Shown here in pieces: positions 14,901 through 48,307 of a stretch of DNA of 64,000 bases (positions within the stretch are counted from its first letter, which is position 1; each line of letters opens with the position of its first letter). Under the pieces are notes generated by a model. That model was not told the DNA's origin. It saw nothing but the letters and a program-made list of their open reading frames with translations, and did no database searches. Both the position numbers and the translations under genes were made by a program. The DNA lies in IMG/VR virus record IMGVR_UViG_3300046517_002304, positions 447,234-511,233 of that record; one strand, written 5' to 3'.

Positions 14901-16852
14901 TGGTAAAGTAAGTTGGTTTCGCCACGAGATAGTTCTCGGTTATAGATCCTAATGTCGTCCATATAACCAGTTAAATTCTGAGTTGACTGGTTATACGAAC
15001 CTATAACTAACGGAGATCCAGCATCAGTTAATCGCGTTCCGTTTCCATCAGATGTAGTTTGATATGCTTGTTCTACACCATTATAATAAATGTGAATGCC
15101 AGAAGCTAAACTAGACCCATTCCATGTTAAAGTTATATGTACCCAAGCATTAACTGGAGGTACTGGAGAAGACCTGATACAATCATTGTTTTGAAAAGTA
15201 ATATTCAGCGCAAGTCCGCCGCTATTATAATCTATAAACCATCCCGATTGAACATCATTATCTGTTTTATACAAAAGAGTTGTGGCGGTTGATATTGAAA
15301 TATACGTCCAAAAACTAACCGTGAACGCACCGGTACCAGTTAAAGCAGTTCTAGGGCCAAGTATATAAGATGTTCTGCTGCCCGTAAAATGAAAACTACC
15401 AAAACCACCTCTGTGACTAAGGACATTAAATCCATCGCCTTGGGCAGCAAACATATTTGTCAACACACCATTATTACTGCGCGTAGTCAAATCATATACT
15501 ATGGTAGATCGACTCTTCTGCGGTAGAGCCATATACCACAAAACTAATCCCTTAGACAAACAATTACCGCTATTAACCGGATAGCTAAAATTAATATTAT
15601 TAGAATCAGTCGGAAAACTCTTTCTATACTTTTGAACAAACCCAGCATTTTGCGTAACTATTCTAAGTCCAGAAAAATGAGACACCCTACAATTAGGTGT
15701 AGATATACTGGAATTACAAATAACAGCGACGGAATCAATGTGGGCTACTTTAGCGCTAGCCCCAATGTTACTATTACATTTTACTGCACAAGTCGCAACA
15801 TGTGTAACTCTACAATTAGGCGTCGTAATGCTAGAGCTACACTTAACATCACAAATACCAAAAACAAAGTTTTGTAATGCAAAGTAAGGTATAAGAGAAG
15901 GCTGAGAATAAAGTTCGTCAGGGTACCGCCAAAGTTCAAAAACCTGTCCTGCCGTAAAAGGTTCGGCGTAAAGACGGAAGTCACGTATCGGTCCTACGAA
16001 GTCATGGCTTGCACTAGCTCCGCTAGTGGCAACCTGCCCACCGATGGTAATAGCCTGATTAGCACAAGATAATACTCCAGCAGCGTTTGCGCTGCTGGAG
16101 TTACTCGTAGCAATTAATTGTCCATTAATATAAAAAGACTGAGGTCGTGGTGATGGAAATCCTGTAAACTTACTTACAACACAAGCATGTATCCATTCGC
16201 CAGGATTATCATCAATCCTAATAACAAAGTCATTACCGGCATAAATGTTATCGATCCAGTGTAATTCACGAGTATGAGGATCGTACCAGAGGTACCATCC
16301 TTGAATTGTCGCTGGCCCACTATCATGAGGAACATGATTGCCAACAATAACATAGGTAAAACCAATAGAAGCTTGGTCCGGCGGTATCATAAACCAAATT
16401 GACATTGTCCAGCCGACTGATTCTGAATTTACAATTTGCGGAATAGAGCACTGGGTAGGTACAGTAATATAATTACTGACGGCGGTCATATTAAACACCA
16501 TACCGAAATATGTGTCATATATCCACTGACCAGTTAGATGACCTGTCAACGAGCCGTTAAAGTGGTTTGGTCCTACGTCCCTAACTGGCCAGCCGCCGGA
16601 AGTGCTGGTCCCGTTGGAATCTCCAGAACCATCGTTCAACGGCATGGCCAACACAAGTGTTGGCGTGAACTGTGAACTACCTTCGTTAATGCCAGGACAC
16701 CAGCGTCCTCCCCACTCTACGTTTGTAATACAAGGACGAACATCGGGGACTGAGCCAGAGAACGACTGGATAGAAACTAGCTGACCGTCCGTACTGGCCG
16801 TGAAAGTAGGATTAATAGTAGAAAATGTGGGCAAAGTACGGACTAGGGCCAT
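11915..16852 (-). CDS. Large virion protein with four LamG/ConA-like lectin domains and beta-repeats (tail fibre/adhesin-like)
   Basis: Repeated FTVSFW...W.H....W......Y.NG...G.DD.RIYNR LamG signatures; YxGxGGLIFxG repeats; TAAATA motif upstream. Confidence 0.85.
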   Translation of the reverse strand: MALVRTLPTFSTINPTFTASTDGQLVSIQSFSGSVPDVRPCITNVEWGGRWCPGINEGSSQFTPTLVLAMPLNDGSGDSNGTSTSGGWPVRDVGPNHFNGSLTGHLTGQWIYDTYFGMVFNMTAVSNYITVPTQCSIPQIVNSESVGWTMSIWFMIPPDQASIGFTYVIVGNHVPHDSGPATIQGWYLWYDPHTRELHWIDNIYAGNDFVIRIDDNPGEWIHACVVSKFTGFPSPRPQSFYINGQLIATSNSSSANAAGVLSCANQAITIGGQVATSGASASHDFVGPIRDFRLYAEPFTAGQVFELWRYPDELYSQPSLIPYFALQNFVFGICDVKCSSSITTPNCRVTHVATCAVKCNSNIGASAKVAHIDSVAVICNSSISTPNCRVSHFSGLRIVTQNAGFVQKYRKSFPTDSNNINFSYPVNSGNCLSKGLVLWYMALPQKSRSTIVYDLTTRSNNGVLTNMFAAQGDGFNVLSHRGGFGSFHFTGSRTSYILGPRTALTGTGAFTVSFWTYISISTATTLLYKTDNDVQSGWFIDYNSGGLALNITFQNNDCIRSSPVPPVNAWVHITLTWNGSSLASGIHIYYNGVEQAYQTTSDGNGTRLTDAGSPLVIGSYNQSTQNLTGYMDDIRIYNRELSRGETNLLYQNSITSYPGLINRANKYINFNTIVAPGNWTIVCNSFIGASGHVASNNNTSIICSSSIGTAGSKVAHVATCVVLNSVSLNPRAKNTIKSACAVICNSTIIAFSPGQRVGTAHLTVVSNIATPNARVAHIATTHIVCRGDCVIIEGQICRVANSSSAILNARVDHVEGGNTLQRAGFAQNASRTFPITINNTNFARQVNFKHPLAQGLTAWYLASPVTSQGLYWYDIVGKHHALFANLQQRFLGGYRPTSRKGGFGSILFFGGASQGAVGPPNELIGTGPFTVSFWIMGVSSGTVIYKTDNNASAGLYIQVNIPSLLVAVVFNGTDCTRSCAPPPFGSWTHVVVTWRGGSAASNIHVYYNGVEVSYSGATDGTGTHGSDSGQPLVIGSYNQITSFVTGYLDDVRIYNRALPANTVLASYTNSLASYPNLINRTSKPINFSFVYGPAAAPLLCVASIGAMPMVNHIATCAIRANSFIGANGFVITPFFGSGGLNFGGSAHSYPVMNFYPSGGIFFNTFPSFANAITSRNPLVWYRLDDPSGTTAVNSGSLGSAMNGTYHGDFTLNQTSLILSDPSNASVLFGGTSSYLLSPDNVAINSSTPYTQRTIELWFRTGADVVTRRTLYEEGDITRGFGIYLDSYVIVMIVWNMTADSGSPAWGFHYVFSSPILQSHQRYHAALSFHAAGHVIAGYLNGVLFGIHGGLADNVGSHDAISIGAKNNGTRYIDGPSTGSGNRFNNLIDEVIVYSDYSDPDEIAFDYHASFPSGYYIPNFVVDGSGGLMLGGTGIVNHILTWINTSGGLIFSGSSDASFQLSYIGTGGLIFSGSADADVETRIYFGTGGLIFGGQADCIVLSHSYTGTGGLIFGGGSTGGQVTYVISLPISWNVNANLSTTLVLSWSIGQGSMMFYTVETNCSTQTCPPLSDSTASCLSRQVMTIPARSLEEVCSKLKKAGIITNIASVKMYSNPVFLSDFTKTQSVNCNTLTDVTAQFFAVSDCS

Positions 16853-16880
16853 ATATTATTTAGAGAATCTCAACTATATT

Positions 16881-17732
16881 ATGGGCATGCCGCCAGATAT
16901 AGCTCCAATAAGAAATAAAACAGCAAAAGATAAACCATGGGAAGGCAATATAAGTAAGAAACCATGGGATTATCAGGTGAGCGCCACGATAGCAGTATTA
17001 GACGCTGTAGAGCCACTAAAACTCGCCGTCCAGTTACTACAACTACAAACAATCAAGCCTTATATCATTTTAGTAGATACTGGGAGTACGCCAGAAAACT
17101 ACAAGGAAATAGAACAACTAAGATCTGAAAACATAGAAGTCCATTCTTTAAAACTAAATGCAGTAGAGCACCCCTCAGACTTTGTGGCGATGGCATGTGA
17201 TTTAGCCGGGTCGGTATGTAGAACAAAGTATATGCTATGGACACATGCCGATTGTTTCTTAACACGAAGAGATGTAATAGAAGAATTACTTGAATTATGC
17301 GACACAGAAAATCCGGTTGTCGGCTACCGATTATCGCCTAGAGCACACGACAACTGGAAAGATATGTTCGGCCATACGCTGACTATGACTGAAATGAGCA
17401 AGTACTTAGAATACAGAATAATGTGGAATTTAAAACAATTCTGTAATTTTTATGGCTTCCCAAATCACAAGCCAGATGAATCGCGGCCCAATTTACCAGA
17501 CACAGAATATTTTGCTAATTTAATATACCAAGACTGTGGGGTTAAAGCCACACTAATCGGCGACGAAGAAAACTTCAAGAGAAATATAACAGATCATTTT
17601 GACCATTGTAGATCTTTTGCATCAGGCATGCTGTACGCGCCGGAATACTATAAAATATGCCAAACATGGATGAATGATGCCATGAAAGATGCGAGAGCTA
17701 GAATTAAAGAGTGGGGAAAAGATGGATTGTAG
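16881..17732 (+). CDS. GT2-like glycosyltransferase
   Basis: ILVDTGS, WTHADCF. Start moved from 16800 (which overlaps the divergent gene) to ATG 16881 or 16887. Confidence 0.7.
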   Translation: MGMPPDIAPIRNKTAKDKPWEGNISKKPWDYQVSATIAVLDAVEPLKLAVQLLQLQTIKPYIILVDTGSTPENYKEIEQLRSENIEVHSLKLNAVEHPSDFVAMACDLAGSVCRTKYMLWTHADCFLTRRDVIEELLELCDTENPVVGYRLSPRAHDNWKDMFGHTLTMTEMSKYLEYRIMWNLKQFCNFYGFPNHKPDESRPNLPDTEYFANLIYQDCGVKATLIGDEENFKRNITDHFDHCRSFASGMLYAPEYYKICQTWMNDAMKDARARIKEWGKDGL

Positions 17733-17748
17733 AATGTTTTAGTATATT

Positions 17749-18432: not shown

Positions 18433-18455
18433 GTATATTTATCGTTATCAATATC

Positions 18456-19976: not shown

Positions 19977-19994
19977 TTATCTAAATATAGTAGT

Positions 19995-21900: not shown

Positions 21901-23115
21901 TCAGCACCAGTAGCACAAGAAGAAGCACTCACCGTTTCGTTCACCGAGAACGACAGGAGTTATAAATTCTGATTTAGTCAAATGCTGGTCAAGTGCAACA
22001 GAGGCAGGGTTAATTTCACTCTTTTCCTTGCTCTGGTGCCAATTTACCGCTACTTCTTTTCCGTCAATCATCAAGAGCCATTTTTCAGATTTTTTATCAT
22101 GACAAAACTCACGAGCATCAAGATGAAAGCTCGGACAAACAACCCAGTAATGATCAAAAATTGCTTTGCCGCCGGTCGCCGGGTAATGCTCAACTAACTT
22201 AAGAAGCTTCTCAACGCGAGGAGGCATAGGGGCATCAAAGGAATAAAGAGGATACTTATTAGGCTGATACTTTAAATTAGGTAAACCATAAGTATCAGCA
22301 ATTTTCCAGAAAGCCAATTTGGCAGGAACCAAATCTCTAGAAACCTGTATGCAACGAGCGCCACTTTCCCATCTGAGGCCCATAGATTTAGCTAAGATCA
22401 TTGCCGCGTCTACCATTTTTAATCTTACGAACCCATAATATTGTTCGGATACTCTTTTCTTTGTGTAATCCATTTTAGTAGAAATCGCTCTACTAAAGGC
22501 TGCTGCCTGCACATCATCAAATGCACTAAGCATTTTCTCTTGCGCGGCCAGTTCATCTACGTAATCATATCCACAATAATATGATTTAAAGGAATCAGGA
22601 TGTACAGAGCATGGAGTCGCTTCCAAAACTCCGGCAAACGGAATACTATTTGGCTTTTTGATCTGCCTGGCTTTAATCCGCTCTTTATCGCTCTTTAAAA
22701 TTCTAACTGGGGGACGAGAAATTTCGTGACAAAAGTTCTTAGAAACTTCTTTAAACTTAGTAAACTGACTACGAATTAATTCTGATAATTCAGCGGTATT
22801 GTGGTCCCTAATATAAGCCGCAGATCCAATGGCTTCGCAAATCAAGGAAAACTTCTTGCGAGTTATGCCATGCTGACTAATAAAAGTAGCTAAATGTGGG
22901 TGGTCAACATCCACTCTCTGACAGAATGAATTGATGCTTCTGCCAAACTTGCCCAAAACCAACTGGCAATCTTCTTCCTCTTGCCTAGCAATCCACTCCA
23001 TCTTGCCGCTAATTTCGCGGTCTATAACGGTAGTGTCGCCATGTTTATTCTTAGCAATCTTGCCAGCGTCGGCTAAAATTGCTTCCTGAAATTCATCAAC
23101 TTCTCTAACCGCCAT
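21901..23115 (-). CDS. Hypothetical protein
   Basis: 404-aa ORF. Confidence 0.65.
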   Translation of the reverse strand: MAVREVDEFQEAILADAGKIAKNKHGDTTVIDREISGKMEWIARQEEEDCQLVLGKFGRSINSFCQRVDVDHPHLATFISQHGITRKKFSLICEAIGSAAYIRDHNTAELSELIRSQFTKFKEVSKNFCHEISRPPVRILKSDKERIKARQIKKPNSIPFAGVLEATPCSVHPDSFKSYYCGYDYVDELAAQEKMLSAFDDVQAAAFSRAISTKMDYTKKRVSEQYYGFVRLKMVDAAMILAKSMGLRWESGARCIQVSRDLVPAKLAFWKIADTYGLPNLKYQPNKYPLYSFDAPMPPRVEKLLKLVEHYPATGGKAIFDHYWVVCPSFHLDAREFCHDKKSEKWLLMIDGKEVAVNWHQSKEKSEINPASVALDQHLTKSEFITPVVLGERNGECFFLCYWC

Positions 23116-23749
23116 TAGGCACCTTATTTTCGCTTGTTAAGGATTTAGGTGAGGGAGTAATCGCCTTCTTAGGCGAAAGTTTCGCTATAATAGAACGTTC
23201 ACTAAACGCAGGCTTACTCGTAACTTCAGATACATCAGAAACGGCAGCTATTACAGAATTAATAATTTCAAACCACCTGTCTTTATGTGGTTGTATTTTT
23301 CTCTTCTTGGCTCTGACCTTCAACTGAACATGAAAGCCTTTGGCAAGAAATTCTCTTAGTTTATTAATCTGAACATCTAAGTCATGTTGTTCAATATTAG
23401 GCGAAAACAATAACTCTTTTTCCGAAACAGAAACTTGACTTTTCCGTTTCTGCTTTTCCTTAAGACACTGTTCGTATTTAAACTTTCCATAATCTGCAAC
23501 AATGCATATTGATACATTATCCTGTTTCGTAATTTCAATTAAGTCCAATCCGAAACCTTTTGCATATGTCAAAGCATCTTGCTTTGACATAACGCCTATC
23601 TGCTCCCCGTCTTTAACAACACGGATCTTAAATGCGTAAATAGAATGGTTAATGTTGTTAGTCGCGTTTTTTGCAGAAAAATCTGAATTTCTCAAAGATT
23701 GTTCCTTAGAAGTACCCTTCTCGCTCAAGTTCCACGAACCTGAATTCAC
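23105..23749 (-). CDS. infC: Translation initiation factor IF-3
   Basis: IN..I...IRVV.DGEQIGVM, A...GLDLIEI, DYGKFKYE, KE..FSPNIEQHDLDV. True start is probably TTG at 23695. Confidence 0.92.
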   Translation of the reverse strand: MNSGSWNLSEKGTSKEQSLRNSDFSAKNATNNINHSIYAFKIRVVKDGEQIGVMSKQDALTYAKGFGLDLIEITKQDNVSICIVADYGKFKYEQCLKEKQKRKSQVSVSEKELLFSPNIEQHDLDVQINKLREFLAKGFHVQLKVRAKKRKIQPHKDRWFEIINSVIAAVSDVSEVTSKPAFSERSIIAKLSPKKAITPSPKSLTSENKVPNGG

Positions 23750-26443: not shown

Positions 26444-26466
26444 ACCATTATATATCTTGCACTAAA

Positions 26467-29653: not shown

Positions 29654-29713
29654 ATCGTTTACTTAACAATACTCCAAAAATTTCAAAAAGGAAGTAAAAT
29701 CCATAAATATTTT

Positions 29714-37950: not shown

Positions 37951-38005
37951 ATAGATTTTCCTCCATATTATTTATGCCGCCCACAACAAAAACCGATAAA
38001 CTAAC

Positions 38006-40456: not shown

Positions 40457-40815
40457 ATGTAATGTTATTTGTGTTAGGAACAATTGGAGCTTCGTTTATT
40501 CTAGTAGACAGCACTTTATTTGCTCCAATTAGAAGCAAGCTAGAAAAATATGAATACCTATATTCTATGGTTACTTGCTATCAATGCAACTCTTTCTGGC
40601 TCGGAATGCTATTTGGATTCTTTTTAATTTCCAGTAATTTGTTTAGCGTATTTGCTTGTGGTTGCGCTGCAAGTTTTCTTAGCATCTTTGCGGCAGCTTT
40701 TATCAATGTATTTGAATCGTTTACTAGCAGAATGCAATCGCTTGGATCTCCCTTCCCGCAAAACGTTCCATGCGTTAACTGCGGCAAGAAACAAACAGAA
40801 GAAGCGTCTAAATAA
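40453..40815 (+). CDS. DUF1360-like membrane protein
   Basis: F.PIR...L..CYQC.SFW motif between TM helices. Confidence 0.65.
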   Translation: MNVMLFVLGTIGASFILVDSTLFAPIRSKLEKYEYLYSMVTCYQCNSFWLGMLFGFFLISSNLFSVFACGCAASFLSIFAAAFINVFESFTSRMQSLGSPFPQNVPCVNCGKKQTEEASK

Positions 40816-40818
40816 CAT

Positions 40819-41499
40819 ATGACGTGCAGAAAATACGTACGCGGATCATACCCCACTAAAGGGAAGTGTTCGCCTTGTGGCGTTTCATTGTGTAATTCTA
40901 AATTGCTACAATGCTGCGGTAAAATCTGTCCGCCTCCAGCGTGCCCGCAAATAGAAAATCAATATGGCATCGGCTGCTGCGCAATCATTGTAGATGGCGC
41001 AAGAACTATGAATTACTCTATAGAATCATCGTGTCCATGCCTAGATGGACTTACCGGCACATTTCAAGCTCTGGGGAATGGGGGTGAGGTAACATCTTGG
41101 GGAGAGGATGGCCATCACCTCGCTAGCCCTCAGTGCGACTGTCGGGAAGGCGGATGCCTAGGACTTCCAGATACATTCAATAAATCTACATTCAGCATGA
41201 CGATCAGGTGCGACAGTGGTGGATTTTCGCTACTGGCGCAAACTTTCGGCGGGAACAACCGAATGTGCGAAGGCGGCTCCTGGGTATGCCAAATGTCTGC
41301 AAATGCATCATGGGTGTGCTGCGATACATCCATGCCGTTACCACTAGAGCCAATAGGCATTGACGGACAAGCATGCGATAGTTTTTCTTACACCTTTGAG
41401 GGATTTATGATGAAGCCTGATTCTTTTTTTAATAGAAATACATGTGGCTGTCCATGTGCTCAAGGATCTTCTATATCCGTTACAGTTACAAATATATAA
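40819..41499 (+). CDS. Cys-rich late (probable virion) protein
   Basis: More than 25 Cys; TAAATA 4 nt upstream. Confidence 0.65.
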   Translation: MTCRKYVRGSYPTKGKCSPCGVSLCNSKLLQCCGKICPPPACPQIENQYGIGCCAIIVDGARTMNYSIESSCPCLDGLTGTFQALGNGGEVTSWGEDGHHLASPQCDCREGGCLGLPDTFNKSTFSMTIRCDSGGFSLLAQTFGGNNRMCEGGSWVCQMSANASWVCCDTSMPLPLEPIGIDGQACDSFSYTFEGFMMKPDSFFNRNTCGCPCAQGSSISVTVTNI

Positions 41500-41502
41500 A
41501 AT

Positions 41503-42027
41503 ATGACAAGATGTAACACGCCAGGCAATCAAAAGTCCTGTTATGTAATAATAGGATTTACAAGTAACATCAAACTAGAGGCCGGAAGCCCAAATACATT
41601 TGACCTCCATTGCGTAAATCAATTCTACTCAATCGGCGATCAAACAATAACTGAAAATGATATCATAAAAAAATATTACTGTAGTGATGGTAGTGACGGA
41701 CATCTACCCTGCAATGTATCATCGGAATGGGCGAATTGTAGCGTACAAGGTGTAACAGTATATCTCAATATCGGAGGACCATACTTAACGCCGCCGGTTG
41801 ATGTGCATGATGGAGACAATATAACAGTGATAGTCACCTTTCCCGGAGATGCACCAATAAACCCCCCCCTGTCCTTAGGAAGATTTCCTGACGGCATTGA
41901 GTGCGTACAGTCTATGCCTATGTTCGTCTTTAGCTACTATAAGCCTAGCCAAAACAAGATAGTTATAAACAGACAGGCATTAATTAGACAAATTAAAGCC
42001 GACCAAAAACGTAGAAATATCCGATAG
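41503..42027 (+). CDS. Cys-containing probable virion protein
   Basis: Follows the Cys-rich gene. Confidence 0.55.
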   Translation: MTRCNTPGNQKSCYVIIGFTSNIKLEAGSPNTFDLHCVNQFYSIGDQTITENDIIKKYYCSDGSDGHLPCNVSSEWANCSVQGVTVYLNIGGPYLTPPVDVHDGDNITVIVTFPGDAPINPPLSLGRFPDGIECVQSMPMFVFSYYKPSQNKIVINRQALIRQIKADQKRRNIR

Positions 42028-42090
42028 TCTTAAAATATACCTTTTCCACAATATATAATACGTACAGTAATTTAATAGGATAATCTAAAA

Positions 42091-42963
42091 ATGAGTCTAA
42101 AATCATTCGAAGAGTTTGTAAAAAATAAAGGTGGAGTTCCTTACGTGTTTTCGGAAAAGATTCCACCAAAGTCAATTTCTGCTGATTCAGAAGGCGATGA
42201 AGAAGGCATGGGATTGCTTGGAAGTCCTCAGATGATGGACAAAGAACAACCCCCACTAACGCGGGTTGAGAAAAAGGACATGGCCGATCCAGAGTATACG
42301 AAGAATGGCGAAAAACTAAAGACTCAAAAAGAAGGCGTTGAACTAGTTGAGCATCGTGGCGAAAGCGATGATTTATCAATGTCAAGTATTGATGGCGGAA
42401 AATTTTCGCCATCAATTAGCGAAGTTGCTTCATATACGGCTAAGTTAATTAAGAAGCACCCTCATACAGCAGAGCACTTTGTTAGAAACCTAAAGAAGCA
42501 CGGCAGTTTTGAGGGATTTATCGCTGAGGCCGTTGAGCACCCAGAAACATTCGCGTGTCTAGCAAATCACATCGGGCATGACGAACATGGTCCCCGCCAT
42601 TCAAAAAAGATGGTCAAGGCCCTAATGGCGCATCACACTGCAAAACATGCTATTAAAGAAAGCGTTGATGGTCCTCGTGGTGGCGATTTCGGTGGCGGAA
42701 TGCCTTCGGCTCCTCCAGCACCAATGGGAGTTGCGCCAATGCCAGTTAATTCAGATCCTACCGGGCTTTCACCAACGACCGGAATGAGTGGGATGGGTGG
42801 AAGCGGGAACCTGAGTACAAGCCAAGCGCCGCCGGCCGTTCAGATGCCTGCTCCATCCGAGTCAGCACACAAGGGCGAAGGGTACCACAACCTGGTATCA
42901 GAAATGAGCAAGGAGCCGGAAATGCACGATGCGATGCGTGAATGTTGCGGCATGGGATACTAA
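42091..42963 (+). CDS. Probable head/internal protein with low-complexity P/G/M tract
   Basis: MSLKSFEEFV N-terminus resembles a T4 capsid-targeting sequence; followed by a terminator. Confidence 0.6.
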   Translation: MSLKSFEEFVKNKGGVPYVFSEKIPPKSISADSEGDEEGMGLLGSPQMMDKEQPPLTRVEKKDMADPEYTKNGEKLKTQKEGVELVEHRGESDDLSMSSIDGGKFSPSISEVASYTAKLIKKHPHTAEHFVRNLKKHGSFEGFIAEAVEHPETFACLANHIGHDEHGPRHSKKMVKALMAHHTAKHAIKESVDGPRGGDFGGGMPSAPPAPMGVAPMPVNSDPTGLSPTTGMSGMGGSGNLSTSQAPPAVQMPAPSESAHKGEGYHNLVSEMSKEPEMHDAMRECCGMGY

Positions 42964-42977
42964 CTTAGTCATAAGTT

Positions 42978-43006
42978 AAAAAAAGCCGCTTTAAGCGGCT
43001 TTTTTT
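42978..43006. terminator. Bidirectional intrinsic terminator between convergent genes
   Basis: AAAAAAAGCCGCTT-T-AAGCGGCTTTTTTT. Confidence 0.9.
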
Positions 43007-43012
43007 ATTCGA

Positions 43013-43555
43013 TCAATCCCCATTACCCTTTTTGTAAATTTTCTTGATCTGGGATAAATCTTCCTTAGACGGCTTGCTACCACGATACTTCTGATATAAT
43101 GGCTGCGCCTTGCACTTATGCTTCCAAAACTTCTCAGTAGCAATCTGTATTTCACATATCATGCCACCAATTACAATATCTACATGCACAGTTCCATAAT
43201 AGCCAAACTCATACTCATTAGGACTATCATTATGGGCGACCTTCTTAACAATGAAATGCTTCTTGATATTATCAACAATTTTAGATATTTGATTTTTGGT
43301 ATCTACAAGAATCGCGGCCCTTAATATGTCAAATACCTTAGATGGAGACTTATTCCTTTTCTTGGTTTTATTATTAAACGACTTCTCGCTTTTAATATCT
43401 ATGACAATCTTATGTCCATCAGCAGAATGCTTGAGTAGCGTAGCAAATTTTGGCTTCAATTCTAAAGCCATTTTCTTTGCTTTATCATAAGTTTGAAAAT
43501 CCTGCTTTTTAGCAATCGGCTGAGGATTTTTCTCTATCCATTCTTTAAAGTCCAT
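43013..43555 (-). CDS. RelA/SpoT-domain small alarmone synthetase-like protein
   Basis: IKSEKSF..K, DILR, GYYGTVH, EIQIAT, LYQKYR. Confidence 0.85.
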   Translation of the reverse strand: MDFKEWIEKNPQPIAKKQDFQTYDKAKKMALELKPKFATLLKHSADGHKIVIDIKSEKSFNNKTKKRNKSPSKVFDILRAAILVDTKNQISKIVDNIKKHFIVKKVAHNDSPNEYEFGYYGTVHVDIVIGGMICEIQIATEKFWKHKCKAQPLYQKYRGSKPSKEDLSQIKKIYKKGNGD

Positions 43556-43569
43556 ACATTATTTATGAA

Positions 43570-43764
43570 CTAGGATTTCTTCTTTTTCTTTTTACGATGT
43601 TCGGCCCTATCACCAGCACTACCAATCGGCCAACCTTCCATTGAAACTCCGGCAACACCTGCCGAGCCAGCAATATTAAAACCGAGTTTCTGCAACCTGC
43701 TTTTTGGCACGGTCCCTACAATAATTGCCCCGCCTTCTTTTAGCCATTCTTGAAACGTTTTCAT
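43570..43764 (-). CDS. Small internal-protein-like peptide
   Basis: MKTFQEWLKE matches the T4 internal-protein CTS; poly-Lys C-terminus. Confidence 0.7.
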   Translation of the reverse strand: MKTFQEWLKEGGAIIVGTVPKSRLQKLGFNIAGSAGVAGVSMEGWPIGSAGDRAEHRKKKKKKS

Positions 43765-43775
43765 ATATTATATAA

Positions 43776-43806
43776 CAAAAGCGGCCTAGGAAATTCCTAG
43801 GCCGCT
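43776..43806 (-). terminator. Intrinsic terminator after the paralog array
   Basis: AGCGGCCTAGGA/TCCTAGGCCGCT 12-bp stem followed by TTT on the minus strand. Confidence 0.8.
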
Positions 43807-43867
43807 CACTATCCAAAAAGGAGACTTGGCTCCTGACAGAAATTATATACCAACTACGCTTTAATAA

Positions 43868-44362
43868 TTAAAAGCCGCCAACTATTTCATGCACTTCATC
43901 AACACTAATTCCTAACACTTTAGAAGCATTTTTAATCTTCTTATGAAGAAGGGTATAATTAGCCTTCATTCGCTTTACGTGCTCTTTCAACTGAGGGTGA
44001 TCGGTATTATATAAAGCGTCCTCTCCCGCGTCCCAAACATCAGCATATGCATCGGCAACATCAATTTCACCAGAGCTAAAATAAGCACAAGCCAAAGATA
44101 CATTATACACAATCGGGTGTTGAACTGTGACCTGTATATCGGTACTAGCCGTAACCGAAATAAGAGACTTTATTTCTCGTATAAGAGGATGTCCCGCTAG
44201 TTTGTTTTGTTCATCATACTGAATATGGTAAATTTTCTGATTAATCTTGCTCTGCAACGCCTGCAAAGCTTTTAAATCATTAACGCTATCTATATCAACG
44301 CCTTTTTTAGCGCCCTTGATTTTAGTTTTAATAGCTTTAACTTTAGTTTTCATATTTTTCAT
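43868..44362 (-). CDS. Hypothetical protein, paralog family A (copy 1)
   Basis: Shares ND.K.L..L...I..KI, HP..K and GIS...V..IV with 44893..45354. Confidence 0.7.
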   Translation of the reverse strand: MKNMKTKVKAIKTKIKGAKKGVDIDSVNDLKALQALQSKINQKIYHIQYDEQNKLAGHPLIREIKSLISVTASTDIQVTVQHPIVYNVSLACAYFSSGEIDVADAYADVWDAGEDALYNTDHPQLKEHVKRMKANYTLLHKKIKNASKVLGISVDEVHEIVGGF

Positions 44363-44914
44363 TTAATCGCCTATTAATTGTTCAAGATCATGCATTCTAA
44401 GATTTGATACAAAGCCACATCTATCATTATAATGGTATCTTGTATTCACGCAACCAGATGCAAACCGATTAATAAACTTACGCTTTTTACCAAACGGCCA
44501 AACTCTATATTTTAACAAATAACTTAATACCGACCATCGCATAGAACTACCGCGCCAAAACTCGCCAGGCTCAATGCAAAAGGTGTGCTGGTTGGTAGTA
44601 CAGTAAATCACAGCAGGGTTTTTTAACTTTAACTTGGCTTCAATATCGGACACGACCTTAATGCGTCCTGGATTATTTGTCGTAATAAAAAATGCTTTAA
44701 ACTTTCCACTTCGGAAGTAATGTAAGTAACCCTGAAAAGAATCCCGACATGACATAGGATTCCATCCATTGGCCGAATAAACACTAGGAAGATAAAAACT
44801 AAAAGATGAGTCTACCGGAAACGGAACTCCTTCTGGAAGTTCCGGCAAACTTTCTATGTAATTACGAGAAAACATGGCATCTCTCATTGTCCTCATAAAT
44901 TGACTATGTCCCAA
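44363..44914 (-). CDS. Hypothetical protein, paralog family B (copy 1)
   Basis: CRDSFQ, FW..S.MR.S, F.SGCVNT..HYN. Confidence 0.7.
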   Translation of the reverse strand: MGHSQFMRTMRDAMFSRNYIESLPELPEGVPFPVDSSFSFYLPSVYSANGWNPMSCRDSFQGYLHYFRSGKFKAFFITTNNPGRIKVVSDIEAKLKLKNPAVIYCTTNQHTFCIEPGEFWRGSSMRWSVLSYLLKYRVWPFGKKRKFINRFASGCVNTRYHYNDRCGFVSNLRMHDLEQLIGD

Positions 44915-45354
44915 ACATCGCCCTCTGATATGCCGAATTCTTTCGCAGTCTTTAATACTTTTTCTCTAATCTGTTTTTGAATTATTCTAATATCCTTAAT
45001 CCTTTGTTTTATTACAGGATGATTGCCACCCTGTATTTTATTCTCTTCTACAGCAGGATAATAATCCCCTTTAAGTTCCACGTAGTCTACTGCAATTTCG
45101 CTGCCTTGATCGTATGAATCTACGATTAGAGAAACTCTAAATTCCAGTGCTTTTTTAGAGGGCACAGTAACATCAAACTCACACCTTCCATTAATCTGCT
45201 GTGCCAATAAACGAATTTCTTTTACCAATGAAAAGCTTGAAAGCTTATTCTTCTTAGCACGATCCTGACTATCAATCTTAGATATTTTATTATCAATACT
45301 TTCTCTAAGCTTAGTCAAAACCTTACGATCATTAATTTTTTCAACATCAATCAT
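44893..45354 (-). CDS. Hypothetical protein, paralog family A (copy 2)
   Basis: See copy 1. Confidence 0.7.
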   Translation of the reverse strand: MIDVEKINDRKVLTKLRESIDNKISKIDSQDRAKKNKLSSFSLVKEIRLLAQQINGRCEFDVTVPSKKALEFRVSLIVDSYDQGSEIAVDYVELKGDYYPAVEENKIQGGNHPVIKQRIKDIRIIQKQIREKVLKTAKEFGISEGDVWDIVNL

Positions 45355-45971
45355 ATCGCATCTCCCATAATTTTCTTGAGTTCTTTACGATTCACAAAGC
45401 ATTTATCAACTTGCTTCGGAGTTAAATTATAAAAATGATCACACCAGCCAGTAAATTTAGGCGCATCATAATAACTATAACCATTATTATGCCTAAAAGT
45501 CTGATAGCGTACATAATGATTGCCGTTTAAAAACTTATTAACGGCAACCCTCGTATTGCGCGATGAAAAATACTCTGACCTACGTATCGTAGAAACAACG
45601 TTGGCCCTATAGCTTCTACCGGCTCTTATTAAAGCTGTCAGTAAAGAAAACCTAACTCTCTTCATCCAAAAACCGGTCAGCTTAATACAAACAATATTCT
45701 TTCCGTCAGTTCTATATCCATTACACCGAAATCTTTTGGGTACCTTAGACTTAATCTGAAAATCTTTCAAAAATTTTATAATATTTCCTAAGTGAGCGCC
45801 ACTCTTACACTGATAAAACAATCTTCTCGGATACGGATTATAGCGAAACGTATCATCCACAGATTCACGACAATACTCCCAATACTGGTAATTGTCGTTT
45901 ACTAAATAAAATGAATCTTTATATTCTCCATAAATATCATCGTTAGATGGAGCTTTAATCAATCTTTTCAT
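45351..45971 (-). CDS. Hypothetical protein, paralog family B (copy 2)
   Basis: CRESVD, FW...VRFSLLT. Confidence 0.65.
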   Translation of the reverse strand: MKRLIKAPSNDDIYGEYKDSFYLVNDNYQYWEYCRESVDDTFRYNPYPRRLFYQCKSGAHLGNIIKFLKDFQIKSKVPKRFRCNGYRTDGKNIVCIKLTGFWMKRVRFSLLTALIRAGRSYRANVVSTIRRSEYFSSRNTRVAVNKFLNGNHYVRYQTFRHNNGYSYYDAPKFTGWCDHFYNLTPKQVDKCFVNRKELKKIMGDAI

Positions 45972-45975
45972 TAAG

Positions 45976-46515
45976 TCACCTACAGATTAACTTGGAAACA
46001 TCAGGAAGTAATTTTAAATTTTCAAAAATACCAAAATCAGGATTGTAATGAATCGCCGTGTTCACACAGCCTGATTTAAACTTTGCTAAAAATTCTTTTT
46101 TCAAATCAGTATCAAAGTATGGGCCAACATACCCCCGAGCCTTAAATACAGAACTAAAAACAGAAAGCCTCATCGGACTAGCAAGCCAAAATTTGCTCAT
46201 TTCAATATAAGTGATACGTTTCTCATCAGTAGGAAAAAAATTAGTGCGATCTAAAGTATCAATATTTAATTCTTGTTCAATATCTTGAACCGGCTGAATA
46301 TGCATTTTAGATGCACCCTCTGGTGCTCTCAAATAAAGAATGTGTCTTTTATCTTCGCTAATTTTCAAAATTCTGCTCTGAAATACGTCCCTGCAAAGAT
46401 ACCACGCTTTATCTGTAAAGCTGAGAAAGTCAGCTATTAAAAATGGATACGACGAGAAATCATAATTAGCATGTGTTGGGGGTATCTTTACACTAGATTT
46501 AAATGGCCAAAACAT
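45976..46515 (-). CDS. Hypothetical protein, paralog family B (copy 3)
   Basis: CRDVFQ, FWLASPMRLS, FKSGCVNTAIHYN; start moved to MFWPF after the GAGG RBS. Confidence 0.7.
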   Translation of the reverse strand: MFWPFKSSVKIPPTHANYDFSSYPFLIADFLSFTDKAWYLCRDVFQSRILKISEDKRHILYLRAPEGASKMHIQPVQDIEQELNIDTLDRTNFFPTDEKRITYIEMSKFWLASPMRLSVFSSVFKARGYVGPYFDTDLKKEFLAKFKSGCVNTAIHYNPDFGIFENLKLLPDVSKLICR

Positions 46516-46516
46516 A

Positions 46517-46750
46517 TTAGACCTCTTTATAACCTTTTGCCGTTTTCTCTTTAACCATCTTAGACACATGCTTAATGGCATCGTCGTTACTTGAGAATTC
46601 CTTAATACTAAAACTGCCAGCAGCGCCTATCTTGCCATACTTAAAAAATACTACGTCTTCTTCACAAAAAACGCTCCAGAACTTATTAGACCGCCCCTTC
46701 GTAAATTCAAACCTACGAAAGACTTCTTTAACGCCATCTAGTTTTTTCAT
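46517..46750 (-). CDS. Stand-alone WGR domain protein
   Basis: RRFEF..G.SNKFW...YGKIG..G...K.F......A.......EK..KGY. Confidence 0.9.
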   Translation of the reverse strand: MKKLDGVKEVFRRFEFTKGRSNKFWSVFCEEDVVFFKYGKIGAAGSFSIKEFSSNDDAIKHVSKMVKEKTAKGYKEV

Positions 46751-46776
46751 AATTGTACTTTTAGAAAGGAAGGCCA

Positions 46777-46805
46777 AATATACCACATTTTGTCAAGCCG
46801 GTCAA
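46777..46805 (-). promoter_or_regulatory. Sigma70 (early-type) promoter of the WGR/paralog operon
   Basis: TTGACC-N17-TATATT with TGTGG extended -10. Confidence 0.65.
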
Positions 46806-46839
46806 TCTCTCCTAAGCAGAATTTTTGTGGTAAAGCCGC

Positions 46840-47319
46840 CTATTGTGATACAAAAACAGCACACCAATAATACATGCTATTATCGCCGCAGGCAACACCT
46901 ATTCCAATATGAGAATAATCTCCTAGCATATTTTTTCTATGACCAGAAGAATTTTCCCACATAGTAATTACTGCTTCGGGGTCATACCAAGATTCGTCGG
47001 CGATATTTTCACCTATCGCACTAAAAGACTTTCCGACTTTCTCTACTCTGTCCCATGGCTCTTCGCCATTATCATTTTTGTGAGAAAGCTTGCCTGCACG
47101 CGCCATCCAGTCAGCATGTCGTTGAGCAACAGAACAAATAATAGCATCCTTAGTTAAATCAGCTTTCCCATTATTAAAACGAAAAGCATTAACGTAATGG
47201 AGCAGCTTATCTGTTTTTTCATCATAGGCTGACACCGCAGTATTAAACGGCGTCTGATGATGGCAACTTACCGCGCAACATAAGAAAAGAATAATAACGA
47301 TTTTTTGGAACATTTTCAA
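46840..47319 (-). CDS. CAP/SCP domain lipoprotein
   Basis: Lipobox-like N-terminus; AQRHADWM...SH, GENIA, W.NSSGHRKNML, IGIG. Confidence 0.92.
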   Translation of the reverse strand: MKMFQKIVIILFLCCAVSCHHQTPFNTAVSAYDEKTDKLLHYVNAFRFNNGKADLTKDAIICSVAQRHADWMARAGKLSHKNDNGEEPWDRVEKVGKSFSAIGENIADESWYDPEAVITMWENSSGHRKNMLGDYSHIGIGVACGDNSMYYWCAVFVSQ

Positions 47320-47322
47320 TCC

Positions 47323-47529
47323 CTATAAATGGCTAATGTCTGCATCATGCTGCCTTGGCAGATTCTTAGCATCATTTTCATCCATGATGATAAGCTCGGG
47401 AACCCCATCTTGCCAAACAGTAATGCCAATTACGTTGTCTAAGTTAGAGCACTTGACGCAGGTCTTGGTACTAGGAAGAGCTTCAAGGCGCTCTTTAGGA
47501 ATCTTCTTACCGCAGGTTTCGCACAACAT
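47323..47529 (-). CDS. TraR/DksA C4-type zinc finger protein
   Basis: CETCGKKIPKERLEALPSTKTCVKC. Confidence 0.9.
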   Translation of the reverse strand: MLCETCGKKIPKERLEALPSTKTCVKCSNLDNVIGITVWQDGVPELIIMDENDAKNLPRQHDADISHL

Positions 47530-47552
47530 AATCTGTATCTAGAATAGTAGTC

Positions 47553-47747
47553 CTAGTTTTTAAAATCACTACGACTAAAAATTATAATAGGAAACGCTAT
47601 AAAAAAATACAAAGATGCTGCGGCACAAACCCATATTGCCCTACCGTCTAATACATTCAACCAGCACATAGCTTGCAAAAGCCAAGCCCCAATGTAGTCA
47701 AAAGAAAACCAAGTTTTCTTAAAGTACTTAAAGTACTGGCGAAACAT
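47553..47747 (-). CDS. Small membrane protein
   Basis: Two hydrophobic segments. Confidence 0.5.
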   Translation of the reverse strand: MFRQYFKYFKKTWFSFDYIGAWLLQAMCWLNVLDGRAIWVCAAASLYFFIAFPIIIFSRSDFKN

Positions 47748-47749
47748 GA

Positions 47750-48001
47750 TTATCGTCCGAATCGGAACCCGAAGCCAAAATATGGCTGGTAGTATGGCTG
47801 ATTATAGTAATAAGGGTTATTATAATAATACGGCTGGTTGTAATAGGGGCGATTGTAGTATGGGTTCCCATAATACTGGCGACCATATGGGCGATTATAA
47901 TTGTTATTCGGCCCACCTACACCAACTCCAAGTCCCCATCCCGCATCACTTACGGCGGGAGCACACAAAAATAAAGCAACAGCAATCAATAGTTTTTTCA
48001 T
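47750..48001 (-). CDS. Secreted Tyr/Asn/Pro-rich low-complexity peptide
   Basis: Signal peptide ending SDA, (N/Q/R)PYY repeats; TATAAATA and GGAG upstream. Confidence 0.7.
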   Translation of the reverse strand: MKKLLIAVALFLCAPAVSDAGWGLGVGVGGPNNNYNRPYGRQYYGNPYYNRPYYNQPYYYNNPYYYNQPYYQPYFGFGFRFGR

Positions 48002-48022
48002 GATTTTTTTCTCCAATTATAT

Positions 48023-48307
48023 TTATATTTCCGAACGAACATCTTCAACAAGCATCACGTACTCTTGTGCTTTTTTCAGTACTTTCAGACAAAGACTTTT
48101 GACAATGCTATCATAATTATTCCGCAAAGTGCCAACCTCAAACCTGTTATAAACTAAATAACCGCCATTATTAGTATCAATAATACCTATATTCCATAGG
48201 CCCATATCGTATATTCCAACGGATAATCCCCGGCGTGAAAACTGGTAGCCATTCAGGCTCTTCCTTGCGAAACCTTTTTCCATCAAATAAGCCATATCAT
48301 CTTCCAT
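48023..48307 (-). CDS. Hypothetical protein
   Basis: ORF in the cluster. Confidence 0.5.
   Translation of the reverse strand: MEDDMAYLMEKGFARKSLNGYQFSRRGLSVGIYDMGLWNIGIIDTNNGGYLVYNRFEVGTLRNNYDSIVKSLCLKVLKKAQEYVMLVEDVRSEI

What the first reader, a model, noticed from the sequence alone, without database searches (positions are those of the whole stretch)
16850..48027. Late-promoter-like TA(A/T)ATA box at fixed short spacing before SD-less ATGs: probable leaderless late mRNAs
Seen: TAAATA lies exactly 4 nt before the ATG at 16857-16862 (LamG fibre), 29704-29709 (lipoprotein), 40809-40814 (Cys-rich protein) and 43560-43565 (SAS). TATATA lies 4-5 nt before the ATG at 43769-43774 and 26449-26454. 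TAAATA lies 6-7 nt before at 18436-18441 (phoH) and 19982-19987. None has room for an SD between box and ATG. Leadered versions occur at 37969-37974 and 48020-48027 (full TATAAATA). Known: T4 late promoters are a lone TATAAATA -10 element. Inference: transcription starts at or next to the AUG, so much of the late programme is leaderless.
Basis: partly seen in the sequence, partly recalled or inferred. Interest (0 to 1): 0.62.

Follow-up and report, generated by a model that had tools for sequence, protein, structure and literature searches.

The report
Leaderless late promoters in huge phage
In this 511-kb soil phage a strict six-base box (TA-N-ATA) sits exactly four bases before the ATG of about 45 mostly virion genes, which most likely means that a T4-gp55-like phage sigma factor makes late messenger RNAs that begin at the start codon itself, without any ribosome-binding leader.

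Summary
All ten cited sites are as described. Genome-wide (the window is the last 64 kb of a complete 511,233-bp phage with terminal repeats), TA[N]ATA lies exactly 4 nt before the first ATG of 44 genes, against 1.4 expected per position (Poisson about 7e-49). No one-mismatch variants occur. Position -1 is a pyrimidine in 43 of 44, and only ATG starts are involved.

The box behaves as a DNA-level promoter:
- Half of these genes sit at divergent junctions, with a median spacer of 37 nt.
- Two divergent pairs share one palindromic TATATA.
- One box follows a 13-bp terminator directly.
- All four box variants are depleted inside genes on both strands.
- The box is absent from the early-like 255-410 kb block.

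In related phages the same box sits 5 nt before the ATG, or about 18 nt before it with an AGGA Shine-Dalgarno between. The genome encodes a region-2-only sigma resembling T4 gp55, and no RNA polymerase of its own was found. In T4 itself the 32 TATAAATA boxes do not abut ATGs.

No RNA data exist, so the transcription start is inferred. Verdict: a leaderless, gp55-type late regulon, a new variant of known kinds. Also noticed: a second fixed-spacing motif, and a phage-encoded IF3.

The parts
16857..16862 (-). TAAATA box, 4 nt before ATG 16852 of the 1645-aa LamG (4x Laminin_G_3) fibre-like gene 11915-16852
29704..29709 (+). TAAATA box, 4 nt before ATG 29714 (156-aa protein with a signal-peptide-like N-terminus)
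40809..40814 (+). TAAATA box, 4 nt before ATG 40819 (226 aa). The last TA plus the next A form the stop codon of the upstream gene.
41493..41498 (+). TATATA box, 4 nt before ATG 41503 (174 aa).
43560..43565 (-). TAAATA box, 4 nt before ATG 43555 of the RelA_SpoT (small alarmone synthetase-like) gene 43013-43555
43769..43774 (-). TATATA box, 4 nt before ATG 43764 (64 aa), directly after a terminator
43779..43807 (-). Intrinsic terminator-like hairpin (13 pairs, 8 G-C) whose T-run merges into the TATATA box. Between the terminator and the ATG there is room for nothing but the box.
26449..26454 (-). TATATA box, 5 nt before ATG 26443 (266 aa)
18436..18441 (-). TAAATA box, 6 nt before ATG 18429 of the PhoH-like gene
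19982..19987 (+). TAAATA box, 7 nt before ATG 19995, in an 18-nt divergent spacer
47536..47541 (-). TAGATA variant box, 6 nt before ATG 47529 (68 aa)
37969..37974 (-). Leadered form: TAAATA-ATAT-GGAGG-N9-ATG (ATG 37950). The SD begins at the position where the ATG sits in the leaderless form.
48020..48027 (-). Leadered form with the full TATAAATA: TAAATA-TAATT-GGAG-N9-ATG (ATG 48001)
51085..51090 (-). Leadered form: TAAATA-ATAGT-GGAG-N9-ATG (ATG 51066)
10129..10776 (-). Second phage sigma factor (215 aa, Sigma70 regions 2 and 4, phrog_351). This is not the gp55-like one, which lies outside the window at genome 95290-95760.
23105..23749 (-). Phage-encoded full-length translation initiation factor IF3 (IF3_N 69 bits, IF3_C 60 bits). 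Possibly relevant to the choice between leadered and leaderless initiation.

Best explanation
TA-N-ATA (TAAATA > TATATA > TACATA, TAGATA) is the -10-only late promoter of this phage. It is read by host RNA polymerase core carrying the phage's gp55-like sigma, which has region 2 only. Transcription starts at the purine five bases after the box. In about 44 genes (about 65 if gaps of 5-7 are included) that purine is the A of the ATG, so the mRNA has no 5' leader or only 1-3 nt. It has no Shine-Dalgarno sequence and must be translated by the leaderless route, in which a ribosome binds a 5'-terminal AUG. A few units keep a minimal leader that begins with GGAG at the same offset.

Shown: the motif, its spacing, its genomic context, its conservation, its depletion inside genes, and the presence of the sigma gene.

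Inferred: that this sigma reads this box, the exact start site, the late timing, and leaderless translation.
For: 1. Sharp spike: 44 genes at gap 4 against 1.43 expected. The gene-call-free count is 61 against about 15.

2. Strict motif: T, A, A, T, A are invariant and there is no excess of one-mismatch variants. No conserved element lies from -60 to -12, so there is no -35.

3. Start-site signature: -1 is T or C in 43/44, -2 is a purine in 36/44, and +1 is A. Only ATG is involved; GTG and TTG show no peak.

4. Unit starts: 23/44 box genes have a divergent upstream neighbour, against 115/728 other genes (Fisher 9e-8), with a median spacer of 37 nt. Divergent ATGs only 14 nt apart share one palindromic TATATA at genome 43191/43206 and 87726/87741. 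Genes 246193(-) and 246244(+) each have a box within a 50-nt spacer. A 13-bp terminator abuts the box at window 43779-43807.

5. DNA-level signal: inside genes all four variants are depleted on both the sense and the antisense strand. Observed/expected is 0.46-0.81, ranking 2-121 of 3400 hexamers, while 13 AT-rich control hexamers give 0.93-1.38.

6. Temporal logic: none of 323 genes in the early-like, one-strand block at 255-410 kb has the box. Box genes with a recognised function are mostly virion genes: tail tube, head closure, tail sheath stabilizer, four phrog_8510 virion proteins, a protease and the LamG fibre.

7. The ATG is the real start. 42/44 have no upstream in-frame start, and there is no excess of downstream SD-led starts (11%, as in other genes). 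The N-terminus of the tail sheath stabilizer matches its orthologues.

8. Relatives (76 loci, 36-53% aa identity): orthologues of the tail sheath stabilizer carry TAAATA, CATAAATA or ATAGATA, then about 8 nt, then AGGA, then 6-8 nt, then ATG; others carry TATATA-N5-ATG. Over 653 distinct gene starts the box peaks at gap 5 (37) and again at gaps 17-19.

9. The sigma: a 156-aa protein matching phrog_234 at E 1e-10 and 2.9e-11. Its best PDB hit is T4 gp55, 7d7c_F. hhalign against T4 gp55 gives 27% identity over 82 columns, pairwise E 0.008 but HHalign probability only 4.8%. A model with pLDDT 80 hits only sigma domain 2 and gp55 (TM 0.52). The gene is conserved and syntenic in relatives, and is itself SD-led.

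10. No phage RNA polymerase was found with PF00562, PF00623 or PF00940 (the PF00940 positive control did not ring, so that negative is uninformative).

11. Leadered mini-class: the box at gap 18 occurs 7 times against 1.4 expected, and in five of them GGAG follows the box (after 4-5 nt in four, 8 nt in one).

12. T4 control: of 32 TATAAATA boxes only 4 have an ATG within 8 nt, at scattered gaps.
Against: - No transcript 5' ends are available. All six runs that hold the phage are soil or rhizosphere DNA.
- A 6-mer is weak as a sole determinant. About 830 TA[AT]ATA copies exist and only about 45-60 precede genes, so something more must restrict use. Candidates are the R-Y-ATG context, replication coupling, or a co-activator.
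- The inferred 4-nt spacer is one shorter than T4's. There the box spans -13 to -6 (PMC2988020). It is also one shorter than in the relatives, which have 5 nt.
- Apart from gap 18 there is no excess of leadered boxes, which is unusual for a promoter class.
- No gp45-type or beta clamp was detected with single Pfam models, and no gp33 was recognised.
- The phage encodes IF3, which in E. coli disfavours leaderless initiation (general knowledge).
- Some box genes are not obviously late functions.
- Which of the two phage sigmas, or the host sigma, reads the box is untested.
Confidence: 0.72

Rival explanations
1. The box is a promoter that yields leaderless mRNAs, but it is read by another holoenzyme and not by the gp55-like protein. 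Candidates are host sigma-70/sigma-A acting on a -10-only promoter, or the phage's 215-aa region 2+4 sigma (window 10129-10776). The genes need not be late.
For: TA-N-ATA resembles a generic TANNNT -10 element. A second phage sigma exists. A few sigma-70-type promoters abut ATGs, for example TTGACA-16-TATAAT-6-ATG at genome 429635. Some box genes (SAS, PhoH, methyltransferase, HNH) are not classic late functions.
Against: - The final invariant A and the 4-nt spacer do not fit sigma-70 geometry, where the hexamer ends in T at -7.
- There is no -35 for a sigma that has region 4.
- The box matches the last six bases of T4's gp55 box.
- The gp55-like gene and the box co-occur across the relatives.
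- The box is absent from the early-like block.
- Sigma-70-type promoters are not enriched over shuffles (48 against 51.6).
Confidence: 0.15
2. The box is an RNA-level translation signal. It would be an A/U-rich element occupying the SD position on leadered or polycistronic mRNAs, which recruits ribosomes (for example through S1) or supports re-initiation after the upstream stop codon.
For: The box occupies -10 to -5, where an SD would sit. 21 of 44 box genes follow a same-strand gene, often 7-16 nt away, and in a few the box overlaps the upstream stop (window 40809, 41493; genome 117090).
Against: - The motif is exact, without degenerate variants, and has a one-position spike, unlike SD or S1 sites.
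- Half the sites are at divergent junctions with spacers of 9-50 nt, and one is directly behind a terminator.
- The depletion inside genes is equally strong on the antisense strand, where an RNA signal would be irrelevant.
- In relatives the same box lies upstream of a normal SD.
Confidence: 0.07
3. The box marks an endonuclease processing site that trims longer transcripts to leaderless or near-leaderless mRNAs.
For: Fixed distance to the AUG. A/U-rich single-stranded sites are typical RNase targets (general knowledge). T4 RegB sets a precedent for phage mRNA cleavage at translation-initiation regions.
Against: The same points on antisense depletion and divergent junctions apply. Transcripts would also have to start inside the opposing gene at 23 junctions. 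No candidate nuclease was sought or found. The conserved Y(-1)/A(+1) context fits initiation.
Confidence: 0.04
4. The pattern is a by-product of AT-rich upstream composition or of TAA stop codons close to the next ATG.
For: The genome is 39% G+C and intergenic spacers are short. TAA is the commonest stop.
Against: 44 observed against 1.4 expected, and against a maximum of 10 in resampled upstream regions. Ten other AT-rich hexamers show no spike. Only three sites overlap an upstream stop.
Confidence: 0.01

Closest known systems
T4-type late transcription: gp55 sigma reading the -10-only late promoter TATAAATA (Geiduschek & Kassavetis 2010, PMC2988020; PDB 7D7C)
   Same: - A small sigma with region 2 only.
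- A strict A/T box without a -35.
- TAAATA equals the last six bases of the T4 box.
- Late genes lie on either strand.
- The sigma gene itself is SD-led and not under the box.
   Different: - Only six bases are conserved here; the two bases before the box are free, apart from 'not T' at -11.
- The box abuts the ATG (4 nt) in about 44 genes. In T4 only 4 of 32 boxes have an ATG within 8 nt, at scattered gaps, and T4 late mRNAs carry SD leaders (general knowledge).
- The inferred spacer is 4 nt against 5 in T4.
- No gp45-type clamp was detected, and gp33 was not recognised.
- The sigma is very divergent: hhalign pairwise E 0.008 (HHalign probability 4.8%), 27% identity over 82 columns.
Leaderless middle/late transcripts of Thermus phages phiYS40 and Lalka27a (review PMC3594737; bioRxiv 10.64898/2026.04.20.719267)
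   Same: Most transcripts of a temporal class begin at the A or G of the initiator codon. The promoters are -10-type with a class-specific hexamer. There is a link to initiation factors: phiYS40 infection raises IF2 and lowers IF3.
   Different: - Those are experimentally mapped; this one is only predicted.
- Different hexamer (TAGGGT in Lalka27a) and a different host lineage, Thermus, which itself uses many leaderless mRNAs.
- No gp55-like sigma is reported there.
- Here the phage encodes its own IF3, whereas phiYS40 infection lowers IF3.
Cellular leaderless genes with a -10 box at fixed distance from the start codon (mycobacteria, PMC4633059; Deinococcus and archaea, from general knowledge)
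   Same: A promoter element at a fixed short distance from the ATG, no SD, and a preference for AUG.
   Different: In those cases the box is TANNNT ending at -7 (6-nt spacer) and is read by the housekeeping sigma. Here the box is TA-N-ATA ending at -5, in a phage-specific regulon with a phage sigma.
Giant phages with mapped start sites: phiKZ (PMC8244752) and AR9 (PMC5312081)
   Same: Large phage genomes with class-specific short promoter motifs.
   Different: [quoted passage not shown] AR9: UTRs of 26-491 nt. No such polymerase was found in this phage.

Membership tests
T4-type (gp55-dependent) late transcription system | Phage-encoded small sigma with similarity confined to sigma region/domain 2 (gp55 family) | tested here: met
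   The 156-aa protein at G000:95290-95760 has only Sigma70_r2 in Pfam. It matches phrog_234 'late sigma transcription factor' at E 1e-10 and 2.9e-11. Its best PDB sequence hit is T4 gp55, 7d7c_F, at E 0.016. hhalign against T4 gp55 gives pairwise E 0.008 (HHalign probability 4.8%) with 27% identity over 82 columns. Foldseek hits are only sigma domain 2 and gp55 (TMt 0.52), though with weak E-values of 0.05-0.13.
T4-type (gp55-dependent) late transcription system | Promoter is a -10-type box alone, with no -35 element | tested here: met
   Information content is about 0 from -60 to -12 in the 44 box genes.
T4-type (gp55-dependent) late transcription system | 8-bp consensus TATAAATA | tested here: not met
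   Only TA-N-ATA is conserved. Positions -12 and -11 are variable (-11 is A 24, G 9, C 9, T 2). The third base is A 29, T 10, C 3, G 2. The full 8-mer is seen in the window only at 48020-48027.
T4-type (gp55-dependent) late transcription system | Box spans -13 to -6 relative to the mapped start (5-nt spacer) | not testable with these tools
   No RNA data. If the start is the A of the ATG, the spacer is 4 nt here and 5 nt in relatives.
T4-type (gp55-dependent) late transcription system | Sliding-clamp (gp45) activation with gp33 co-activator | tested here: inconclusive
   PF09116 (gp45 C-terminal) and PF02768 (beta-clamp domain 3) gave no hit in the genome. Only single models were tried. gp33 has no usable model, and the 88-aa ORF just downstream of the sigma gene has no PHROG hit.
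Leaderless mRNA regulon | Primary transcript 5' end coincides with the A of the AUG | not testable with these tools
   No RNA run holds the phage. The contigs laid on the window carry no information about 5' ends.
Leaderless mRNA regulon | Promoter element at fixed distance from the start codon, with no room for an SD | tested here: met
   Spike at exactly 4 nt. The box occupies -10 to -5.
Leaderless mRNA regulon | AUG (not GUG/UUG) start codons; the annotated start is the true start | tested here: met
   No peak for GTG or TTG. 42/44 have no upstream in-frame start, and there is no excess of downstream SD-led starts. The N-terminus agrees with orthologues.
Leaderless mRNA regulon | Sites lie at the starts of transcription units | tested here: met
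   23/44 are at divergent junctions, against 115/728 for other genes (Fisher 9e-8). One site is directly behind a terminator. However, 19 sites are internal to same-strand arrays.

The most novel reading that the evidence does not exclude
A widespread clade of soil and aquatic phages runs its gp55-type late programme largely on leaderless mRNAs and controls the matching translation mode itself. On this reading the phage-encoded IF3 (window 23105-23749), and perhaps the S21-like protein, retune ribosomes between SD-led early/middle mRNAs and 5'-AUG late mRNAs. A 39-aa deletion in this phage's sigma, in the segment before the region-2 core, would have shifted start-site selection by one base: box-to-ATG is 4 nt here against 5 nt in all relatives that keep the segment.
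Probability: 0.15. Interest if true: 0.85.

Novelty: new variant of a known kind. Interest (0 to 1): 0.62.

Why it matters
If confirmed, this would be the first gp55-type late regulon built on leaderless mRNAs, and as far as I could find the first leaderless temporal class predicted in a huge phage (over 500 kb). phiKZ and AR9, the giant phages with mapped starts, have none.

It gives a simple, testable rule (TA-N-ATA-N4-ATG) for annotating gene starts and late units in this clade. Standard gene callers that expect an SD will mis-start such genes.

It also offers a natural pair of sigma variants with 4-nt and 5-nt box-to-start spacing for studying start-site selection.

Together with a phage-encoded IF3, it makes directly testable the question of whether phages switch the host's mode of translation initiation during infection.

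Tried and rejected
- RNA evidence: the look-up of sequencing runs found six holders, all soil or rhizosphere DNA contigs and none RNA.
- Population variation: read laying on four of those runs over window 39500-44500 showed no differences, so it gave no test of constraint.
- Phage RNA polymerases: multisubunit beta/beta' (PF00562, PF00623) gave no hit. T7-like (PF00940) gave no hit, but its control also rang nowhere, so that negative is weak.
- Sigma-70-type bipartite promoters are not enriched over shuffles in window 36000-52000 (48 against 51.6). Genome-wide they are only anecdotally placed 5-7 nt before ATGs.
- Terminators directly upstream of boxes: only one case genome-wide. Terminator-like hairpins are rare upstream of all classes.
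- An upstream -35-like or other fixed element for the box: none. The enriched upstream words (TCATA, CATAA) are the divergent neighbour's start codon and box.
- The search for related loci with the sigma protein alone found only the same phage. Homologues were recovered by phmmer in loci fetched with the neighbouring tail gene.
- A profile search of PDB with the sigma alignment hit SigA region 2 only weakly (E 0.03) and did not list gp55. The single sequence did.
- Host inference from the phage IF3: best bacterial matches are 31-42% identical and spread over many phyla, so it was uninformative.
- Megablast of a window segment against GenBank phages gave nothing. The nearest DnaE relative is an unannotated 595-kb uncultured phage, LR756511.1, at 38.5% aa identity.
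- S1 domain (PF00575): no hit.
- Complex prediction was not used. The host RNA polymerase is unknown, so no meaningful partner could be chosen.
- The large protein searches were not used, because the family scans sufficed.

Full report
CONTEXT. The window is the last 64 kb (447234-511233) of a single-contig virus record of 511,233 bp. The record has direct terminal repeats, is rated complete, and has 39% G+C. It is held by soil and rhizosphere metagenomes. It has no near relative among GenBank phages. Its DnaE-type polymerase is closest (38.5% aa) to an unannotated 595-kb uncultured phage. I made crude self-trained gene calls for the whole genome: 774 genes with 89% coverage. I used them together with tests that need no gene calls.

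THE OBSERVATION. Three further sites lie in the window: TATATA-N4-ATG at 41493-41498, TAGATA-N6-ATG at 47536-47541, and a third leadered copy at 51085-51090.

Genome-wide the signal is far above chance:
- A position-by-position hexamer census upstream of first ATGs puts TAAATA at gap 4 at the top, with 29 genes against a background of 0.3. TATATA at gap 4 occurs in 10 genes.
- TA.ATA occurs at gap 4 in 44 of 736 ATG genes, against 1.43 per position further upstream (Poisson 6.6e-49). Markov resampling of the proximal 40 nt gave at most 10.
- Ignoring gene calls, TA[AT]ATA-N4-ATG occurs 61 times against 10-25 at any other gap from 0 to 12. About 45 of these open real ORFs.
- Ten control AT-rich hexamers show no spike, and neither do GTG, TTG, CTG, ATA, ATT or ATC in place of ATG.
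- The motif is strict. T, A, A, T, A are invariant, the third base is A 29, T 10, C 3, G 2, and single-mismatch versions are not enriched.
- The flanks add 'not T' at -11, a purine at -2 (36/44) and a pyrimidine at -1 (43/44). The full pattern is V-TA-N-ATA-NN-R-Y-ATG.
- Gaps of 5-7 are mildly enriched (7, 9 and 5 genes against 1.4).

IS IT A PROMOTER? Seven independent lines say the box is a DNA-level transcription signal at unit starts.

(i) 23 of 44 box genes have a divergent upstream neighbour, against 115 of 728 other genes (Fisher 9e-8). The median divergent spacer is 37 nt. Such spacers cannot hold two conventional promoters plus two leaders.

(ii) In two places, divergent ATGs 14 nt apart share one palindromic TATATA with 4 nt on either side (genome 43191/43206 and 87726/87741). 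At 246193/246244 two boxes face outward in a 50-nt spacer. At 223972 and 236982 the box overlaps the neighbour's start codon in a 9-nt spacer.

(iii) In the window, the best terminator-like hairpin (43779-43807, minus strand, 13 pairs) runs through its T-tract straight into the TATATA box of the 64-aa gene at 43764. Nothing but the box fits between the terminator and the ATG.

(iv) Inside coding regions all four box variants are under-represented on both the sense and the antisense strand. Observed/expected is 0.46-0.81, ranking 2, 25, 51 and 121 of 3400 on the sense strand and 2, 16, 21 and 29 on the antisense strand. Thirteen AT-rich control hexamers give 0.93-1.38. The other most-avoided hexamers are palindromic restriction-type sites. 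An RNA-level signal would not be avoided on the antisense strand.

(v) None of the 323 genes in the 255-410 kb block has the box. That block consists of short genes, almost all on one strand, and looks early.

(vi) Y(-1)/A(+1) is the usual initiation dinucleotide of multisubunit RNA polymerases (general knowledge).

(vii) A small leadered class exists. The box at gap 18 occurs 7 times against 1.4 expected, and five of these contain GGAG: four read TAAATA-N4/5-GGAG(G)-N9-ATG, three of them in the window, and one has the GGAG 8 nt after the box. In those four the SD begins where the ATG sits in the leaderless class, as expected if the start lies about five bases after the box.

IS THE ATG THE START? 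42 of 44 box genes have no in-frame start upstream. Downstream SD-preceded alternative starts are no more frequent than in other genes (11%). The N-terminus of the tail sheath stabilizer (MPDNPC...) matches the orthologues' N-termini.

WHICH GENES? Box genes with a recognisable function are mostly virion genes:
- tail tube (phrog_4542)
- head closure (phrog_218)
- tail sheath stabilizer (phrog_227)
- four large phrog_8510 virion proteins in tandem, each with its own box
- a protease (phrog_3677)
- the 1645-aa LamG fibre

There are also a thioredoxin-domain protein, a methyltransferase, an HNH endonuclease, a RelA_SpoT small alarmone synthetase and, at gap 6, PhoH. Outside the early-like block, 41 of 171 first-in-unit genes and 36 of 120 genes at divergent junctions carry the box at gap 4-7.

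WHO READS IT? I found no multisubunit and no T7-like RNA polymerase gene (the T7 control was uninformative). Two sigma-family genes exist.

One lies in the window at 10129-10776. It is 215 aa with regions 2 and 4.

The other lies at genome 95290-95760. It is 156 aa with region 2 only. The evidence that it is gp55-like is:
- It matches phrog_234 'late sigma transcription factor' at E 1e-10, and at 2.9e-11 in the genome search.
- Its best PDB sequence hit is T4 gp55 (7d7c_F, E 0.016).
- It aligns to T4 gp55 residues 42-127 with 27% identity (hhalign pairwise E 0.008, HHalign probability 4.8%).
- An AlphaFold model (pLDDT 80) matches only sigma domain 2 structures and gp55 (TMt 0.52), though with weak Foldseek E-values.

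Because the box has no -35 partner, a region-2-only sigma is the natural reader. That assignment is inference.

RELATIVES. Using the tail sheath stabilizer, I fetched 76 loci at 36-53% identity.
- The gp55-like gene is conserved and syntenic in them, and it is itself SD-led (AAGGAG).
- Upstream of the orthologous tail gene, many relatives have TAAATA, CATAAATA or ATAGATA followed by about 8 nt, AGGA, 6-8 nt and the ATG. Others have TATATA-N5-ATG.
- Over 653 distinct gene starts the box peaks at gap 5 (37; TATATA 28), with a second hump at gaps 17-19. Several orthologous groups repeat the gap-5 form.

So the box is a conserved upstream element of late genes in this clade, and the leader is optional. 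The spacer is 5 nt in relatives, equal to T4's (there the box spans -13 to -6; PMC2988020), but 4 nt in this phage. This phage's sigma also lacks about 39 residues that all 15 aligned relatives keep between the first helix and the region-2 core. The coincidence is a single event and only suggestive.

CONTROL. T4 has 32 perfect TATAAATA boxes. Only four have any ATG within 8 nt, at gaps 1, 3, 5 and 7, which is fewer than for the reversed control pattern. The abutting arrangement is therefore not a general property of gp55 phages.

WHAT IS KNOWN. Thermus phages phiYS40 and Lalka27a make mostly leaderless middle/late transcripts, and phiYS40 infection raises IF2 and lowers IF3 (PMC3594737; bioRxiv 10.64898/2026.04.20.719267). 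[quoted passage not shown] AR9: UTRs of 26-491 nt (PMC5312081). My literature searches found no report of gp55-type boxes fused to start codons. Such a search is not exhaustive.

WEAK POINTS.
- No RNA data exist, so the start site, the timing and leaderless translation are all inferred.
- A 6-mer with about 830 genomic copies cannot by itself define about 50 promoters. The R-Y-ATG context, a co-activator, or coupling to replication may add specificity.
- No clamp or gp33 was recognised.
- The phage encodes a full-length IF3 (window 23105-23749). In E. coli this factor counteracts leaderless initiation (general knowledge). That is either a complication or a clue to regulation.

SIDE FINDINGS.
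- A second and longer motif, tTAGTTATCCnTAa, occurs 185 times, 162 of them on the minus strand within 260-409 kb. An ATG lies exactly 10 nt after TCC in about 46 cases and 13 nt after it in 14-20. It looks like the promoter of another temporal class, again partly fused to start codons.
- A perfect TTGACA-16-TATAAT-6-ATG lies at genome 429635.

VERDICT. It is a new variant of two known kinds: the gp55-type late promoter and the phage leaderless regulon.

Noticed in passing
genome G000:C1 about 260,000-409,000 (outside the window), minus strand; e.g. 278946, 289935, 326018: A second fixed-spacing motif, tTAGTTATCCnTAa. There are 185 copies of AGTTATCC, 162 on the minus strand, with a median spacing of 465 nt. 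They lie in front of small same-strand genes. An ATG lies exactly 10 nt after TCC in about 46 cases and 13 nt after it in 14-20; 76 copies have no ATG within 30 nt. It is probably the promoter of another (early or middle) class, partly leaderless as well. TAGTTA is depleted on the antisense strand of genes.
   Followed up: partly
window 23105-23749 (-): A phage-encoded full-length translation initiation factor IF3 (IF3_N 69 bits, IF3_C 60 bits). It is at most 42% identical to any bacterial IF3 found. Its start codon is uncertain (GTG at 23749, with the IF3_N domain beginning at residue 33).
   Followed up: partly
window 33230-33475 (-): An 81-aa ORF with a weak, sub-threshold match to ribosomal protein S21 (20.6 bits against a cut-off of 27).
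   Followed up: no
window 10129-10776 (-): A second phage sigma factor (215 aa, Sigma70 regions 2 and 4, phrog_351). Its promoter class is unknown; the TAGTTATCC motif is a candidate.
   Followed up: partly
whole genome, coding regions: Strong avoidance of palindromic restriction-type hexamers inside genes: CTGCAG 0 observed against 60 expected, CAGCTG 0 against 43, GGATCC 3 against 47, and also CAATTG, GGCGCC and TCGCGA.
   Followed up: no
window 38006-40456 (+) and 51084-52418 (-): A DnaE-type (Pol III alpha-like, phrog_405) DNA polymerase split into two genes about 11 kb apart on opposite strands. The 444-aa gene matches profile positions 42-439 and the 816-aa gene matches positions 441-1045.
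   Followed up: no
genome G000:C1:429635 (-), and 409081 (+), 147670 (-): Sigma-70-type promoters that abut start codons, e.g. TTGACA-16-TATAAT-6-ATG. This would be a textbook leaderless design for the host sigma. There are too few to test statistically.
   Followed up: partly
genome 95290-95760 (L002:1327-1797), alignment A1: This phage's gp55-like sigma lacks about 39 residues that all 15 aligned relatives keep, and it starts with TTG. The deletion coincides with the 4-nt box-to-ATG spacing, against 5 nt in the relatives.
   Followed up: partly
window 24009-25631 (-) and 43013-43555 (-): Auxiliary genes: a thiamine-pyrophosphate enzyme (three TPP domains, 540 aa) and a RelA_SpoT-domain small alarmone synthetase-like protein (180 aa). 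The latter is under a leaderless box.
   Followed up: no
genome 114874-123086 (-) (L003:5874-14086): Four tandem large genes (738, 745, 766 and 475 aa; three are paralogous phrog_8510 virion proteins), each preceded by its own box at 4 nt, with only 7-16 nt between genes.
   Followed up: partly
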